Positions 20,001-29,840 of a stretch of DNA of 64,000 bases are shown here, piece after piece; position 1 is the first letter of the stretch; each line of letters begins with the position of its first letter. The stretch is taken from positions 11,170,698-11,234,697 of the forward strand of contig OZ037765.1 in the NCBI GenBank assembly GCA_964035545.1. The letters are read 5' to 3'. The notes under the pieces were generated by a model. It was not told where the DNA came from, made no database searches, and worked only from the letters and a program-made list of their open reading frames with translations. Made by a program: the position numbers and the translations under genes. Source of the DNA: Bugula neritina. Taxonomy: Eukaryota; Animalia; Bryozoa.

Positions 20001-22684
20001 GTAATGCATTGGCTTAGACTTATAATATTTAGGAATGACTGGACTTCAATTCAACATAATATGCAGCCCATTGCAACACATGTACGCTGTTGCAACACAT
20101 GTACGCTGCTGCAACACATGTACGCTGCTGCAACACATATACGCTGTTGCAACATAATATGTACGCTGTTGCAACATAATATGTACGCTGTTGCAATAGA
20201 TGTGGCTGTGTGTATGTTAATTACTAGTAATTTGGTAACTACTCAATTCAGCAATAATTAAAATAACATACACGTACACTATTTAATATTTACTACAGTA
20301 ATTACATAAGTCAGTAACTGTTTTCATGAAGTAATGACTATATAAAATGTAATGATAGAGTGCTGAAGAAAATAGTACCTTATATTTTTTCAGAGCTGCT
20401 TGTGAAGCTGTATTCTCTTCCTGCAGATGTTTGACTCGTTGTTGGAGAAATCTAAAACCACAGAAACACCATTTATCAGACTCATCATAGCAGAAAGCAT
20501 GTATGAAAGTTTAGATAATTCAACAGGTTTCAAAAGTCCAGACTTTTTCCAACCAGATGTCACTAAAATATGTAACTTGGTTACCAGATCCAGCTTGTTT
20601 TAATTACATATTTTACTCCAATATTGTTGTCTAAATTGAATAACAACTCTATTACTCATTGCTATAGTTTTGGTACACAAAACACTAAAAGTGAATTATG
20701 GATGCTGATCACTTTCATTGTTTTGAAATACATTTGTGTGTATTATTTTTACGTGTGTAAAAGCGAGACGTTTGCTAGCAATCACTAATGGAATATTAAT
20801 AGGGCAAATCAATAATTATGAACCAGAGCAAAGGTTGGCTGGGATTTGTGTAAAATACGAAGCTCTCTGCTCCCACCTGTTCTCCATAATCAATGCGTCA
20901 ATATCTAGCACATGCTTCTCATCTCCTCTCATAATGAAATTCACTTCCTTATTTAGTCTTATGTACTTGGTTTTATAAGTATCTCGTTCTGTTTCTAATT
21001 CTTCCTTTAAGTCTAGTACTTGTTTCATATCTAGCTCCAGCTGAGAATACTACAAGTGGACACCAGTACATTGTGTTTAAAACACATTATTTTATACAAG
21101 CCGGAATTATTTCAAAACAAGAAAATAACAGAAATATAACAGAAAATTGCCCTTTGCCCTAGTGAGAGCTTAACACCTGCTACAAGAGGAAACTAGGTAC
21201 TAGCTAAGAATGATTCTGTGGGTAGGTTGATACAACTAAAATATTTTCTTGATCATGAAAACTACGCCTACAGTCTAATAAAATATGACAACCTAAAGGG
21301 GTAGACAAAGCACTGCGCCTTTTGCAAGATAAAAGTTAACTCAAATACATCTCAAAATTACGACAGAATGTCGAATATATTACTTCGAGACGAGATTTTT
21401 CTAGTTCTTCAATTAGTGCATCTCTTTCACTGGCGGTCAGCGGTTTTCTCTCCGGTGTAGTCGGCTCTGTGGTACCCAGTCTGTACTTAACTATCTTTGC
21501 ACGTAGAATCTTTAAATATATAGATTAAATATATTGAAGCAGCATAGCCTATATTATTGTTCCGCCAAAAAAGTTAATGACTTGGGCTACAAAGTTAAGG
21601 AACTTATATGATCATTCTAAATGTGTGATAAAAAGTTTTAATTTATTAGAAATAATTAAGAAATATTCACCTTAATATCACCTTCAGCATCTGATAACTT
21701 TTGTTTTAACTCATCAATTTCTAAGTGAGACGAAATATTGGTAGTACTAAACAGTTCAGGCATTCCAGCATCCTAAATGAAGAAAAATTCTCCATAAAAT
21801 ACAGAAAAAACATTCAAAAATTATCATAGAATTGAACCAAAACTTTAAAATGATTATTAAAAAATTAAAAAATCTAAGAATTACTTTAGCGAGGATCTGC
21901 TTCTTCAACCCTTGACATCTACTTCTTAGCTGATCAGCCATAACTCTCAGCTGGTTTCTTTCACCTTGACATTCAGCCAACTCCCGACTCAAGATTAATA
22001 AAGCATCATTTTTACTATCTAACTTTCTTTTGAGATCTTGATACTAGAAGTATACATATATATAAAACATTCAATTTTAATACTTCTCTTTATGCCCATT
22101 ACTGCAAAATTATGTATACAAATGCAACATTTGCTATCCTGATACAAATCTAATCTTTAGACTATAGTAGTATATTTAAATCATATGATAAAGAGAAGTA
22201 AACCAGTAAGAAAACCAATACAATTTGTTTAGACATACAATAACTTTTTTCAATATCATTTTTAGTGAAAGTAAATTAATTTTATAAAGAAAATGAAGCT
22301 AGCAGAGATTATTATTTTCTATAAATAATCATAAAAATTGCACGAATTAAAACTAATAAACTAGCTATCTTAAACACAATATAGTAGCAAAAACTCTTTG
22401 TTGATACAACACAGTTATTGGATCACTTTAGATGTTAAGCTGCATCTAAAATTGCTAATTTTTTAAAGATCGAATCAACTTTTGCATATCATATAAGATG
22501 ATTCAGGAGTGCTTTATTTCTGCATTCGAGATTTGGGTCAGGATAAACAGCTGATACAGAAATATTAACATAAAGATGAGAGCATACATGTAACTACACA
22601 TTAACTATGTACCTCATTCCTCAAGATCTCATGCTTATGCTTTAGATTAGCATGTACAGCTTGAATTCTAACAGTTGGATCCAT
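17051..22684 (-). CDS. CCDC149: Coiled-coil domain-containing protein 149, about 565 aa
   Basis: Exons 22613-22684, 21885-22043, 21671-21772, 21384-21509, 20877-21049, 20379-20451, 19438-19578, 18576-18667, 17916-17995, 17051-17730; GT-AG, frame-consistent. Family blocks KRKLDSKNDALLILSREL, AEGDIKILR, LDIDALIMENRFLQQR, LKTLAATLLDAINDKNLALNHQRKSNKLLGSRI; acidic low-complexity last exon. Confidence 0.92.
20071..20195. repeat. Minisatellite, unit TTGCAACACATGTACGCTG (19 bp, about 4 copies, then two 22-bp variants)
   Basis: Directly visible tandem array in a CCDC149 intron. Confidence 0.9.
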
Positions 22685-25140: not shown

Positions 25141-25187
25141 GCTACATGATGTGGCAGTCAACTCTCAGTATCAATATGACCATCAGT

Positions 25188-28100
25188 ATGCATAAACAAA
25201 TTCAATTTCTTGTCGTTTTTATATTAATGTCAAGCATTTCTGCTTTGTACTTTCATATCCAGGAAACAGAGAAAAAATGTTTTATAGAAGAAATTCCAGA
25301 CCAAACAATGGTAACAGGTGAGACCAGCCGTCATTAAATTTAAATTATTATAATTAATAATAATTAAATTTATTTAATAATTTAATGATTATCATTATCA
25401 TTATTGATTATTCATATTGATTAAGTTTATTTTTAAATTAATTTTGATTTATTAAATAATTATATTAATTATAATATAAAATATTTAATTTCATGTTGAA
25501 TTTAATGTTCAAATTCATAGTATTATCAAGTTTAAAATTAATCAGTATCACTATCTGTAAGTGTAAGACTAAGTGTATAGTAACAGTTAATTACTATTTT
25601 TATTAGTATTAGTATTACTATTAGACATTAGTATTACTATTAGTAATACTAATACTAATAGTAATAGTTATACTAATGTAACAGTAATACTAATACTAAT
25701 AGTAATACTAAGTCTAATAGTTATAGTGTATACTGTATAGTAAATTAAAATATATATTAATAATAATATTTATATTATAATTATTATAAAATAATAAACA
25801 TTATTTAAATATGCGAGACCTAGGGCCTGGGGGGCAAGGGGCTGAGAGTGAGACGTAATACTGATACTGATACTCATAGTAATGCTCATAGAGTTAGACA
25901 TAGCTCAGACTTTAACTCATAAGTCAATTTGTCATAGTTATACTTGTACTTGTAGTTATAGTATAAGTTATACTCATACTGATACTGATTATCATAATCA
26001 TAATGATAATGTCAATGATATCCTATTCATATTGAAGTGATATTGATTACCAGTGTCACTTAATCATTATCATTATGATAATGATTATGTTGTACTTCAG
26101 GGCAGGGTTGGGGTCAATTGCATGTGAATGTAATTAATTACAACTACAATTACATGAAGATTTGTCAATTACAATTATAATTACAGTTAAAAAGTGATGT
26201 AATTAATTACAATTACATGGCAATGTAATTAATTACAATTACAATTACTATTGTTCTCATAAGGGATAAACGGAAGTTATGCAATCTCACTTCTGGGGTC
26301 CAACTACCAGGGGCAATTTTGACAGTGGTGAATCAGCAGTGATACTATACTACATTGACTTAGTTTGAACTTGTTATTTAACAGTAGGCATGGTAGGAAA
26401 AGCATGAATGTTTTATGATTTAAAAGTTTGAAGTAATTTACATGTAATTATAAAGTAATTGTAAAAATCAATTACATTAGATATGTAATTAATTACAATT
26501 ACATTTTTATACATCAATTGCAAATTACATTCAATCACTTGAAAAAATGTAATTAATTACAACCAATTACAAATTACAATTACCCCAACCCTGCTGCAGA
26601 GTCAAATGTATAATTTATTTTTGTAAGTTCCTCATGGGAAATTTTTTACCAAGATTCTTGACATATTCCAAGATAGGTTCACACAAGCTGATATATGCAA
26701 GTCGTTGTACTCTTTTTGGGGTACCCATACTGTTAAGGTACAATTTTCTTTAAGTTGAATTTTAAGTCTATCTGATAGTTTGCTTCAAGATGATTAGTTT
26801 AGCCTGTTCTAGTATTCTCTATTCTGTAGTTAGCTGAAATTAGGCTTTTGATTTTAAGGTTAAAATCAAATAATTTCAACTTGGTTAAATTATTTTTAAG
26901 CTATGATTTGATCTCTTGTCAGTTTTAAAATCAAACTTTATATCTTGTATAATACATATTTTACTAGATTTATAATTATGTTATAATATAGGATATATAA
27001 TAGGACATATTAGTTTTATTATAAATATTGTTTATTATATATTATGTAAATTAAGTTAGCTAAAACTAGTGGCCTGATGAAATTAAATGAATCGTAATTG
27101 CCAAATTTAAGTGATTGTAGTTTCAAATCTGAAATTTAGTTTTTTAACTCATAACTCATAGCCATAGATGAAAGTTTAAGTTAAATTGAAACTATTTTTT
27201 TACAATTTTTTCATTGTTATTAGTGTTTAATCCAGTAATTTTAAAGTACTCCAGTGTTGCGTATATGTGTAGAGCCAAAGTGCTTCATTTGTTTTGGTTG
27301 TGAACCAGTGGATACTCACAGTTGGCTAGTATTGCATTATTTTATGTTCAAGCATTATTGGGGCCCAAATTTCAGTTCTTTATGGCAGGAAGCTACTGTA
27401 GTAAGCATAGGAGCTTGTTTGTAGCTGGTGAAAGACTAAGTAGTGATGAAATTCTGATTTCTTTCATTCATAACTTTGCATAGTTTGTTTTGTTAGAGAA
27501 TTCCTAACTATAGTGTTTTCTGTGTAGCTGTTATATGTGTATGTATACACACCGAACTACACATGCATATTCAATATAGATTGAAATATTTGTAGGAAGT
27601 GTCAATTTTTGAAGCTTGAAAGCTTGAATAATTTTGGTATTACTTTTGACAGAAAGTTGCTTGTCGGTATTTTTTGAGTATTCAGGTTTGATGAGCAAAT
27701 AAATTGCTTATTTTATCTACAGAAAAACCTTTAAAGGTCACCAACCCTTTAACTATCCTTTAGCTGGTGTCACAGATTGCTGTAAAAGCTTACTATCCAT
27801 ATTCCTGATTTTTATATGCAAAACTTCCTTTCTAAATTTTACCTTTAAATAATATGCAAAACCTGTTTTGTCTTCAATCACATGATATATGGTGTTGTTT
27901 TAAAAATACGTTAAAAGTTTCTAGAGTATTTAAACAATCTCATTTGCTAACGATCTATACTATAGGAAACTATAAGGTGGAAATGTTTGACGAACAGAAG
28001 AACACTTTTGTTCCAACACTGGTAGGTTTGGGCATGTTAGTACAAGTTAAGGATCCTGAAGAGAAAGAACTCCTATCAAGGGTAACTTACTTTTCACTAT

Positions 28101-29840
28101 TTAACTATATGAATAATTCTATTTAATGAATGTGTCGCAGGATTGTACAAAGTGCAGGAATGGGACGATGGAACTAAAGATTATTATGACCAGGCTGCAT
28201 TTAGCTATGGCATGCATGTAGAAGTGCTTGATCCCACTGGACACCCTCAATTATCAAGAGTAATTGCTGTGGCCGTCAAAACTCAAATTATCTATGTGTT
28301 AATTATAGTAGTGGGGGCAAATAAAGTCTTCCAGTATTTGATCTCTTGTCTTGTCTTGTGTTGAATTTATAAAGTTTATTGTGTAATTGTCATGTTAAAT
28401 TTCGGTTGTAGCTACGTCTTTCTATGTGAAATTATAATGTATGATTTGTTATAACATCATGCTGTCATTTACTAGGCTCCTCAGTCAATGGTTTCATTGG
28501 CAATCAACATTTCTGTCTTTGCTCTGTGAATCTAAGCCTTACTTAAACCACACTTGGCAATAACTCTAAAAGTTAGATTATTGTACCTAGTCAGTAGTTC
28601 TATTTGAGCTGTTTGCTCTGGTGAAATGTGACCTTTCTCAAGATTGCCACTTACTACATTTGTATATAATTTCAATGGCATGTTTACTGAGCTAGTTATC
28701 ACATTTTTGCATCAACCAATCGTACTGCAGTTGGACTAGTCTCTTATCAAACTCATCTAAGATGCTTTGTTAGTGCTTTTTCAAAATTTGGAGTCATGTG
28801 ATCTTTCACAAAGAAAAATATGGTACAATAGGTTTGCATAAAGCCAATTTAATGCTTTATCGTCTTCAGTCTTAAATTAATTTTTTTAAACTGCTAAATG
28901 TTATTGGCTAGAATTCTGTTTTCAAAGTTGTTTTAGGCAAGTTTGAGTCGCATATTTTTATTGTCTATATTTATAAACCAGCGCAGGAAAATTGAATTTC
29001 TCTAGTTGGTAACCAACGAAACTCTTATAAATTTGCTATTTACATCTACTAATTAGCAAATATATTAAATGTTTTTCAGATGTATGCAGCAGAAGGAAGG
29101 TTTACATTCACTTCTCATACTTCTGGAGAACACCAGATATGTTTGCATTCAAACTCCACTGCTTGGTTTGGTGGTGGCAAACTGGTTGGTAAATTTTAGT
29201 ATTATAAAACTTCAATTCCAAATTGTATCCGTGATATTTTTTTAAAACAACCAGAATTTCAGTGGGTATATGTAGCAATAAACCTGTATTTTGATTTTTT
29301 TTCTGCATACATTAGTGTAGTTGCACAATTTGAGACAAATTGACTAATGCTTGTTGAAAAAATAAAGTGAAAATTTACTGCAAAGATGGCAATTTCTCAG
29401 TTTTCCAAAAGTATTGATTTTCCCTGTAGAGAGTCCATCTTGATATTCAAGTTGGTGATCATGCCATAGATTACCAGGATGTAGCCAACAAAGAGAAGCT
29501 GTCTGAGTTACAAATTAGAGTGCGTCAACTGCTGGAACAAGTGGAGCAAATTCAAAAAGAGCAAAACTACCAGAGGGTTTGTAATATTCTTCATTCCTAA
29601 TGCAGCCAATTGCAAAATGTGTAAGGGTTGTTTATCCAGAAGAGAACGGTCTTGTTCACCAATTGATACATCGTGTGATTTATTTTTTAGTATCGAGAAG
29701 AAAGATTTAGACAAACCAGTGAAAGCACCAACCAGCGTGTACTATACTGGGCATTGGCTCAAACTTTTGTTCTTTTATTAACTGGTTTATGGCAAATGCG
29801 ACATCTTAAAGGCTTCTTTGAGGCTAAAAAGCTTGTATAA
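25188..29840 (+). CDS. TMED9: p24alpha family cargo receptor (TMED9/TMED4/eclair type), about 215-216 aa
   Basis: Exons 25188-25317 (in-frame ATGs also at 25146, 25149, 25176), exon 2a 27966-28081 or 2b 28141-28259, 29080-29184, 29430-29576, 29691-29840. Signal peptide, [41 protein letters not shown], coiled coil, transmembrane helix and C-terminal FFEAKKLV dilysine signal; AATAAA at 29991. The symbol is nominal: it is probably co-orthologous to TMED4 and TMED9. Confidence 0.93.
26103..26593. mobile_element. hAT-type MITE in p24alpha intron 1
   Basis: TIRs CAGGGTTGGGGT...ACCCCAACCCTG; flanking 8-mers cttcaggg / ctgcagag (6 of 8 match, decayed 8-bp TSD); many subterminal CAATTAC / GTAATTAATTAC motifs at both ends. 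Confidence 0.8.
27966..28081 (+). CDS. p24alpha exon 2a (GOLD domain variant A)
   Basis: tatag acceptor, phase 1 in, phase 0 out, gtaact donor; encodes [39 protein letters not shown]. Confidence 0.9.
28141..28259 (+). CDS. p24alpha exon 2b (GOLD domain variant B, duplicate of 2a)
   Basis: cgcag acceptor, phase 1 in, phase 0 out, gtaatt donor; encodes [40 protein letters not shown]; open frame, homologous to 2a. Confidence 0.85.

What the first reader, a model, noticed from the sequence alone, without database searches (positions are those of the whole stretch)
27966..28259. Tandem duplicated, apparently mutually exclusive exons swap part of the GOLD domain of a p24alpha cargo receptor
Seen: two homologous exons (116 and 119 nt), both entered in phase 1 and left in phase 0, both open, with intact AG/GT sites, sharing G-x-YKV-x-x-x-D and GM-x-V-x-V-x-DP-x5-LSR but only about 14 of 40 residues identical. 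Either one alone gives a complete 215-216 aa protein. Using both shifts the frame to a TAG inside 2b, and skipping both also breaks the frame. The spacer is 59 nt (28082-28140), whereas every other coding intron I assembled here is 112 nt or longer, and candidate branch points (ctatttaac ~28100, ctatttaat ~28122) lie under 50 nt from the 2a donor. Established: short donor-to-branchpoint distance and frameshift-coupled NMD are known ways of enforcing mutual exclusion, and the luminal GOLD domain takes part in p24 oligomerisation and cargo handling. Inference: one gene makes two p24alpha subunits with different luminal surfaces, a splice switch for ER-Golgi cargo selection. High divergence with preserved frame suggests an old duplication under selection. 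I do not know of a described mutually exclusive exon pair in this subfamily.
Basis: partly seen in the sequence, partly recalled or inferred. Interest (0 to 1): 0.85.

Follow-up and report, generated by a model that had tools for sequence, protein, structure and literature searches.

The report
Either-or exon pair in p24alpha receptor
A moss animal's gene for an ER-to-Golgi cargo receptor (p24alpha) carries two alternative copies of one exon that rebuild about 40% of its cargo-side domain; the same either-or pair is already annotated in molluscs, ribbon worms and an annelid, so this is an old but unremarked splice switch, not a one-off.

Summary
Window 25146-29840 (+) holds a five-exon p24alpha (TMED4/9, eca-like) gene of a Bugula neritina-type bryozoan. 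Exon 2 occurs twice: 2a at 27966-28081 (116 nt) and 2b at 28141-28259 (119 nt), 59 nt apart and 14/38 identical. Using both or neither gives premature stops.

Exon 2b is missing from the published Bugula and Watersipora gene models. It is intact in eight bryozoan lineages, with AG/GT sites and exact length. Its substitutions follow a coding pattern (0.29/0.19/0.56 per codon position), and dN is about 0.31 against saturated dS. So it is translated, and only replacing 2a keeps the frame.

The same exon is an annotated either-or pair in a chiton, bivalves, gastropods, nemerteans and an annelid. There the isoforms are identical except for this segment; where I mapped the genes, the A copy comes first. 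This is therefore the bryozoan member of a spiralian-wide mutually exclusive pair. It is present in databases but, as far as I could search, not described in papers.

Steric enforcement is plausible in five lineages (52-63 nt spacers) but not in three (77-119 nt). Frame incompatibility is universal.

The functional difference between the isoforms is inference only.

The parts
25146..25317 (+). Exon 1, coding part from the first in-frame ATG: signal peptide and the first GOLD strands (LYFHI..., KKCFIEEIP with the first Cys). It ends in phase 1 before GTGAGA.
   Evidence: EMP24_GP25L profile positions 1-25. It matches the start of Bugula neritina TMED4 KAF6032925.1.
27966..28081 (+). Exon 2a (116 nt), the 'A-type' copy. 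It encodes G-NYKVEMFD...[11 protein letters not shown]...LLSR and is the copy used in the published bryozoan gene models.
   Evidence: It is identical in P0210. It is 79-87% conserved in other bryozoan contigs. Pairwise dN is about 0.10 and codon-position differences are 0.16/0.04/0.53.
28082..28140 (+). Spacer intron of 59 nt between 2a and 2b (GT...AG). Candidate branch points lie 15-45 nt from the 2a donor.
   Evidence: The homologous spacers in other bryozoan lineages are 52, 56, 56, 63, 77, 89 and 90-119 nt.
28141..28259 (+). Exon 2b (119 nt), the 'B-type' copy. It encodes G-LYKVQEWD...DQ...[10 protein letters not shown]...QLSR and is not annotated in the Bugula neritina or Watersipora subatra models.
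   Evidence: Columns invariant in nine sequences (alignment A5) are Q, W, DQ, GMHV, DP, Q.SR. Codon-position differences are 0.29/0.19/0.56 and dN is about 0.31.
29080..29184 (+). Exon 3: GOLD strands including the second Cys (GEHQICLHS).
   Evidence: It is 95-100% conserved in the bryozoan contigs.
29430..29576 (+). Exon 4: the last GOLD strand, the linker and the coiled coil.
29691..29840 (+). Exon 5, coding part: end of the coiled coil, transmembrane helix, FFEAKKLV tail and TAA stop.

Best explanation
The gene is the p24alpha (TMED4/TMED9/eclair-type) subunit of the ER-Golgi p24 cargo-receptor complex in a Bugula neritina-type bryozoan. Its exon 2 encodes residues 58-96, which form about three and a half of the eight GOLD-domain strands and the loops between them. 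The exon exists as two tandem copies.

Each mRNA takes one copy: exon 1 > 2a > 3, or exon 1 > 2b > 3. This gives two receptors that are identical in signal peptide, disulfide cysteines, coiled coil, membrane helix and COPI/COPII tail. They differ at about 24 of 39 positions on the luminal GOLD domain.

Exclusivity is guaranteed at the product level because both exons are 2 mod 3. Transcripts with both or neither carry early stops and should be removed by nonsense-mediated decay. In lineages with 52-63 nt spacers, including this one, splicing from the 2a donor to the 2b acceptor is probably also sterically disfavoured.

The pair arose before the sampled bryozoans diverged. It sits at the same place and in the same order as the annotated pair in molluscs, nemerteans and an annelid, so it is probably one old lophotrochozoan invention.

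What is shown: the anatomy, the frame logic, the conservation and coding constraint of 2b, and either-or isoforms in other phyla. What is inferred: actual either-or use in this species, NMD, the steric block, and any difference in cargo or partner choice.
For: Gene identity:
- Pfam EMP24_GP25L hits on exons 1, 3, 4 and 5.
- P0210 (Bugula neritina TMED4, identical to the window product from exon 2a to the end) matches human TMED9 chains at E 1e-99.

Pair anatomy and frames.

Exon 2b is conserved. Phmmer of the 39-aa exon against 1.84 billion representatives found six fragments of genomic ORFs that carry it, at E 6e-17 to 8e-06. Contigs L007, L008-10, L011, L012, L013 (Watersipora), L017-23 and L024 all show 2a, spacer, 2b, exon 3, with 116 and 119 nt and AG/GT kept.

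Coding constraint:
- Differences per site at codon positions 1/2/3 are 0.288/0.191/0.560 for 2b and 0.161/0.039/0.532 for 2a.
- The two other frames of 2b are open in only 3 of 8 and 0 of 8 lineages.
- dN is 0.31 for 2b and 0.10 for 2a, with dS saturated.

Tree: bryozoan A copies form one clade (100/99) and B copies another (99/99).

Other phyla: eleven isoform pairs are identical except for this segment. These are Liolophura, Lineus, Tubulanus, Biomphalaria, Babylonia, Mercenaria, Sinanodonta, Mytilus coruscus, Owenia and two pairs of unnamed proteins from JGI and MERC. The Babylonia pair also differs in the last exon. Both copies lie in one gene, A before B, in Lineus, Liolophura and Owenia.

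Structure: the AlphaFold2 model of P0210 places exon 2 on strands 54-66, 71-74, 81-86 and 92-98.
Against: - No transcript of this or any other bryozoan containing 2b was seen.
- The three protein searches and the metagenome scan returned only genomic fragments for 2b.
- The two named bryozoan gene models (KAF6032925.1 and XP_067938373.1) use 2a only. So 2b may be a minor or tissue-restricted form.
- Exon 2b evolves three times faster than 2a.
- The steric block is not general, given spacers of 77-119 nt in three bryozoan lineages.
- Orthology of the B copies between phyla is unresolved on 39 columns.
Confidence: 0.85

Rival explanations
1. Exon 2b is an unused relic of an exon duplication (a pseudo-exon). 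The gene makes only the annotated 2a protein.
For: Both named bryozoan gene models lack 2b. No 2b-containing spliced product was found in any database searched. Exon 2b is much less conserved than 2a.
Against: At synonymous saturation a relic would not stay open, exactly 119 nt long and flanked by AG and GTAA/GTAT in eight lineages. Nor would it show third-position-biased change and thirteen invariant residues. The homologous second copy is used in annotated isoforms of other phyla.
Confidence: 0.04
2. Exon 2b acts mainly as a 'poison' exon. Its inclusion after 2a creates a stop and lowers p24alpha output through NMD, rather than making a second protein.
For: Joint inclusion gives a stop 26 codons into 2b. 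In lineages with 77-119 nt spacers, 2a-to-2b splicing should be possible.
Against: A poison exon needs no conserved peptide. Here the conserved, periodic frame is the one used when 2b replaces 2a. The frame read after 2a is the +2 frame, which carries stops in all eight lineages. The short spacers in five lineages disfavour joint inclusion.
Confidence: 0.06
3. The bryozoan pair is an independent, bryozoan-specific duplication that only mimics the pairs of molluscs, nemerteans and annelids (convergent exon duplication at the same exon).
For: B copies of different phyla do not group in the tree and differ in length (37-41 aa). The spacers differ 20-fold.
Against: The exon, the phases and the order (conserved A copy first, divergent B copy second) are the same in the four groups whose genes were mapped: bryozoans, a nemertean, a chiton and an annelid. 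A single clade of all B copies is not rejected (p-AU 0.3), although that test has little power here.
Confidence: 0.3

Closest known systems
Annotated isoform pairs of 'transmembrane emp24 domain-containing protein eca-like / 4-like / 9-like' in Liolophura sinensis, Lineus longissimus, Tubulanus polymorphus, Biomphalaria glabrata, Babylonia areolata, Mercenaria mercenaria, Sinanodonta woodiana, Mytilus coruscus and Owenia fusiformis (RefSeq/GenBank)
   Same: The same exon of the same gene is swapped, and in all pairs but Babylonia's the rest of the protein is identical. Where mapped, both copies lie in tandem between exon 1 and exon 3, with the conserved A-type copy first. Lengths are 2 mod 3, so the copies exclude each other by frame.
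   Different: Spacers are 326-1766 nt there against 52-119 nt in bryozoans. Owenia has a third copy. The B copies are too diverged to prove orthology. In bryozoans the second copy is not annotated at all.
Vertebrate paralogues TMED4 and TMED9 (p24alpha3 and p24alpha2)
   Same: Both give two alpha subunits with the same architecture and tail that differ on the GOLD domain. One difference is His versus a hydrophobic residue in the G-M-x-V strand: TMED4 has H and TMED9 has F, while bryozoan 2b has H and 2a has L.
   Different: The vertebrate forms arose by gene duplication, so they differ along their whole length and have separate promoters. Here one promoter and one gene are used, and only 39-40 residues differ.
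Sterically enforced mutually exclusive exons such as alpha-tropomyosin exons 2/3 (established knowledge, not tested here)
   Same: The intron between the two exons is very short. Candidate branch points lie 15-45 nt from the upstream donor in five bryozoan lineages.
   Different: Branch points are not mapped. Three bryozoan lineages and all other phyla have spacers long enough to splice.
ERGIC-53/LMAN1 tandem alternative exons noted elsewhere in this genome (scan note s1-442876, unchecked)
   Same: It is another ER-Golgi cargo receptor whose luminal binding domain is said to be varied by a duplicated exon.
   Different: It is a different protein family (L-type lectin). I did not test that note.

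Membership tests
p24 alpha subfamily (TMED4/TMED9/eclair) | emp24/GOLD domain followed by a coiled coil and one transmembrane helix | tested here: met
   Pfam PF01105 hits on exons 1, 3, 4 and 5 cover profile positions 1-25, 61-85, 90-138 and 140-182. The AlphaFold2 model shows strands followed by one long helix, 146-228.
p24 alpha subfamily (TMED4/TMED9/eclair) | Closest to alpha members rather than beta, gamma or delta; FFxxKKLV-type tail | tested here: met
   P0210 matches PDB chains of TMED9 at 1e-99, TMED10 at 3e-26 and TMED2 at 3e-14. The tail FFEAKKLV is read directly.
p24 alpha subfamily (TMED4/TMED9/eclair) | Two GOLD cysteines forming the conserved disulfide | tested here: met
   The Cys in KKCFIEE (exon 1) and the Cys in HQICLHS (exon 3) are invariant in 41 aligned homologues. 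They correspond to C49 and C121 of TMED9 (PMC11414720). Both lie outside the swapped exon.
Mutually exclusive exon pair | Adjacent homologous exons with the same entry and exit phases and intact splice sites | tested here: met
Mutually exclusive exon pair | Joint inclusion or joint skipping is not productive | tested here: met
   Both cases give stops. The exons are 116 and 119 nt in all eight bryozoan lineages.
Mutually exclusive exon pair | Both copies kept by selection on the encoded peptide | tested here: met
   Codon-position periodicity and dN well below saturated dS for both copies. Each copy forms its own clade across bryozoans.
Mutually exclusive exon pair | Mature transcripts contain exactly one of the two | not testable with these tools
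For the homologous pair in other phyla it is met at the level of annotated isoforms and two unnamed JGI proteins from short contigs of 1306 and 1312 nt.
Sterically enforced mutually exclusive exons | Distance from the upstream donor to the branch point of the downstream exon is too short for spliceosome assembly (roughly under 50 nt) | tested here: inconclusive
   YTNAY candidates lie 15-45 nt from the donor in the window, L008, L012 and L024; L013, with a 56-nt spacer, has no YTNAY match. In L007 and L017-23 most lie 61-105 nt away, with single matches at 49 nt in four of the L017-23 contigs; L011's single match is at 41 nt in a 77-nt spacer. Branch points are not mapped, and the minimal intron size of this animal is unknown. 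The shortest constitutive introns seen in these genes are 78-114 nt.

The most novel reading that the evidence does not exclude
The exon-2 pair is a single invention of the lophotrochozoan ancestor. It does by splicing what vertebrates later did by duplicating the gene into TMED4 and TMED9. In this reading it supplies two alpha subunits that differ at a surface position of a GOLD strand: His in G-M-H-V versus Leu, Phe or Tyr. That position would set pH-dependent cargo release or the choice of partner subunits.

One copy has lost the His in bryozoans (2a), bivalves (B copy), Babylonia (B), Owenia (B) and vertebrate TMED9. Every single-copy exon compared keeps it.
Probability: 0.15. Interest if true: 0.7.

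Novelty: new member of a known kind. Interest (0 to 1): 0.45.

Why it matters
p24 proteins are abundant, essential ER-Golgi cargo receptors, and how they choose cargo is still unclear. The GOLD domain is held responsible for that choice (PMC11414720).

A natural, conserved swap of 39-40 GOLD residues, with the rest of the protein held constant, is a ready-made experiment. The positions that differ between the two copies mark surfaces that selection treats as functionally separable. Several invertebrate phyla offer the same test.

The finding also corrects two bryozoan gene models that list one isoform only. Together with the unchecked ERGIC-53 note, it hints that this animal diversifies early-secretory receptors by exon choice.

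It is not a new mechanism. Mutually exclusive exons are common, and this scan has many such notes on this genome.

Tried and rejected
I did not resend a trimmed stretch, so read laying was never used.

2. Spliced 2b products. I looked with a 2b-fragment profile, with a profile headed by a full-length relative and with one headed by Watersipora p24alpha. Only genomic ORF fragments carry a bryozoan 2b.

3. Metagenome contig scan with the 2b profile. It returned eight loci, all genomic.

4. One cluster member (P0013) was an unrelated bacterial AMP-binding protein, so that look-up was wasted.

5. Look-ups of the shorter isoforms failed because only the longest product of a gene is on record. The longer isoforms worked.

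6. Pairwise dN/dS. dS was not computable for most pairs because of saturation. I replaced it with codon-position counts.

7. Inverted repeats around the pair that might act as docking or selector RNA. Only short AT-rich matches of chance quality turned up, so I did not pursue this.

8. Exon tree across phyla. It is unresolved between phyla.

9. Steps left out because a spliced model has no reference: searching, exact look-up or folding of the joined 2b isoform of this gene, and any search with a typed exon-exon junction.

10. Rejected reading: an insect origin, my first guess from the size and A+T content of the genome. It was replaced by the match to Bugula neritina.
Full report
**What is in the sequence**

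The + strand between 25146 and 29840 carries a five-exon gene.
- Exon 1 ends at 25317 in phase 1, before GTGAGA.
- Exon 3 is 29080-29184.
- Exon 4 is 29430-29576.
- Exon 5 is 29691-29840 and ends in FFEAKKLV and TAA.

Exons 1, 3, 4 and 5 hit Pfam EMP24_GP25L in order along the profile.

Between exons 1 and 3 lie two exons of 116 nt (27966-28081) and 119 nt (28141-28259). Each has an AG acceptor and a GTAA donor, is entered in phase 1 and is left in phase 0. They are 59 nt apart. Their translations are 14/38 identical with one gap, E 2e-06.

If both are used, 2b is read in a frame that stops at its 27th codon. If neither is used, the frame stops at the 4th codon of exon 4. One tool quirk: the first full codon of 2b is TTG, which these tools print as M.

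**Whose gene it is**

The genome (216 Mb, about 32% G+C) is that of a bryozoan. The 90% cluster of the Watersipora subatra protein XP_067938373.1 also holds KAF6032925.1, 'TMED4 [Bugula neritina]', 229 aa (P0210). That protein is identical to the window's product from exon 2a to the end. It differs at four positions of the signal peptide. The window is therefore from Bugula neritina in the broad sense or a very near relative.

P0210 matches solved human TMED9 at E 1e-99, TMED10 at 3e-26 and TMED2 at 3e-14. So the gene is a p24 alpha.

Both named bryozoan models use 2a only.

**Is 2b a real exon?**

Phmmer of the 39-aa exon against 1.84 billion representatives gave eleven matches at E up to 0.001. 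The six best are fragments of genomic ORFs carrying the exon. Each is followed by V, which is the GT of the donor.

The contigs behind these fragments, the Watersipora gene and a metagenome scan give eight lineages at DNA level: the window, L007, L008-10, L011, L012, L013, L017-23 and L024. In all eight:
- The order is 2a, spacer, 2b, exon 3.
- The exons are exactly 116 and 119 nt.
- The AG and GTAA/GTAT sites are kept.

Synonymous change between these lineages is saturated; dS was not computable for most pairs. Mean dN is 0.31 for 2b and 0.10 for 2a.

Differences per site at codon positions 1, 2 and 3 are 0.288, 0.191 and 0.560 for 2b, and 0.161, 0.039 and 0.532 for 2a. The other two frames of 2b are open in 3 and 0 of 8 lineages. 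Thirteen columns are invariant in nine sequences: Q, W, DQ, GMHV, DP, Q.SR.

This is selection on a peptide read in the frame that is used only when 2b replaces 2a. A relic or a pure poison exon would not show it.

In a tree of the exon segments, the bryozoan A copies form one clade (100/99) and the B copies another (99/99). So the duplication predates the sampled bryozoans.

**The same pair elsewhere**

Two profile searches that reached full-length proteins listed many spiralian p24alpha entries named isoform X1 and X2. Eleven pairs have the same N-terminus and the same 80 residues after this segment but differ within it. All but the Babylonia pair, which also differs in the last exon, are identical everywhere else:
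- Chiton: Liolophura sinensis.
- Nemerteans: Lineus longissimus and Tubulanus polymorphus.
- Gastropods: Biomphalaria glabrata and Babylonia areolata.
- Bivalves: Mercenaria mercenaria, Sinanodonta woodiana and Mytilus coruscus.
- Annelid: Owenia fusiformis.
- Two pairs of unnamed proteins from JGI and MERC. The JGI pair comes from contigs of 1306 and 1312 nt.

I mapped the genes of Lineus, Liolophura and Owenia. Both copies lie in one gene between exon 1 and exon 3, with the conserved A-type copy first. Spacers are 1229 nt in Lineus and 326 nt in Liolophura. Owenia has 562 and 1766 nt, because it has a third open copy.

The chiton and bivalve B copies group together (86/91), and so do the two nemertean B copies (90/95). 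Relations between phyla are unresolved on 39 columns. One clade of all B copies is not rejected (p-AU 0.3).

The bryozoan pair is therefore one more member of an either-or pair that is already in sequence databases. Four full-text searches found no paper that describes it. The one TMED mention next to 'mutually exclusive exons' that I read concerns Tmed2 in muscle and is unrelated.

**How exclusion is enforced**

Frame incompatibility is universal, because the exon bridges phase 1 to phase 0 and so every copy is 2 mod 3. Removal of the faulty forms by nonsense-mediated decay is inferred from the position of the stops.

Bryozoan spacers are 52, 56, 56, 59 and 63 nt in five lineages, but 77, 89 and 90-119 nt in three.
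- In four of the five short-spacer lineages, YTNAY candidates within 10-45 nt of the 2b acceptor lie 15-45 nt from the 2a donor; L013 has none.
- In L007 and L017-23 most candidates lie 61-105 nt from the donor, with single matches at 49 nt in four of those contigs. L011's only match is at 41 nt in a 77-nt spacer.

The spacer is the shortest intron of the gene wherever I could compare. Constitutive introns in these genes are 78-114 nt or more. No convincing RNA pairing around the pair was found.

**What the swap changes**

An AlphaFold2 model of P0210 has mean pLDDT 78, and the GOLD strands are mostly 76-82. It puts exon 2 (residues 58-96) on strands 54-66, 71-74, 81-86 and 92-98 and the loops between them. 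That is about three and a half of the eight GOLD strands.

The two cysteines of the conserved disulfide lie in exons 1 and 3. So does the beta2 edge strand, which a TMED9 study proposes for cargo contact (C49, E52 and C121 in PMC11414720). These are not swapped.

Positions shared by 2a and 2b are Y, K and V of the first strand, D, G-M-x-V-x-V, D-P and S-R. These follow the alternating pattern of core residues. The differing positions are mostly the alternate residues and the two loops. This fits one fold with two surfaces, which is inference.

One recurrent difference is His versus a hydrophobic residue in G-M-x-V:
- Bryozoans: 2b has H and 2a has L.
- Bivalves: A has H and B has L or F.
- Babylonia: A has H and B has Y.
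- Owenia: A has H and B has L.
- Vertebrates: TMED4 has H and TMED9 has F.

Whether this matters is unknown.

**Limits**

No RNA of this species was examined. I did not resend part of the stretch, so no reads were laid.

Because a spliced model has no reference, I did not search, look up or fold the joined 2b isoform, and I did not search typed exon junctions. All searches were exon by exon.

The unnamed contigs are called bryozoan only because their exons group with Bugula and Watersipora.

**Verdict**

This is a real, selected, almost certainly mutually exclusive exon pair. It is new for bryozoan annotation but belongs to a spiralian-wide pair already present in databases. It is of moderate interest as a natural experiment on the GOLD domain. 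The mechanism is not new.

Noticed in passing
window 21870-22067 (- strand): An exon similar to the CC149 (CCDC149) gene lies head-to-head upstream of p24alpha. The same arrangement is seen in Owenia (L016) and, from the called genes, in Liolophura (L015). This points to microsynteny conserved across three phyla.
   Followed up: partly
L016:2789-2902 (Owenia fusiformis): A third open copy of exon 2 lies between the two annotated alternatives, so Owenia seems to have a three-exon cluster.
   Followed up: no
P0054 (Lamellibrachia satsuma) and P0156 versus P0117 (Babylonia areolata): The Lamellibrachia model contains two tandem copies of the exon-4 segment (147 nt each, so both stay in frame). 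This is probably a second either-or pair annotated as joint inclusion. The Babylonia isoforms also differ in the last exon, which holds the membrane helix and tail.
   Followed up: no
L013:3975-4093 (Watersipora subatra, OY755158.1): An intact B-type exon, 56 nt after exon 2a, is absent from the only Watersipora product found in the protein collection, XP_067938373.1. Its first codon would read Ala instead of Gly.
   Followed up: yes
G000:C2:22925800-22925943 (L003): A second, divergent p24alpha-like gene end lies on another contig. Its exon-5 segment is 56% identical with a KKLV tail, and its exon-4 segment is 37% identical. The upstream exons were not inspected.
   Followed up: partly
L017-L023 (ENA assemblies ERZ1740056-72): Within one lineage the 2a-2b spacer varies between 90 and 119 nt among contigs from different samples. 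Spacer length is therefore not tightly constrained there.
   Followed up: partly
P0055 (Saccostrea echinata isoform X2): This annotated isoform joins the whole A copy to the second half of the B copy. It may reflect an internal acceptor in the B exon or a model artefact.
   Followed up: no
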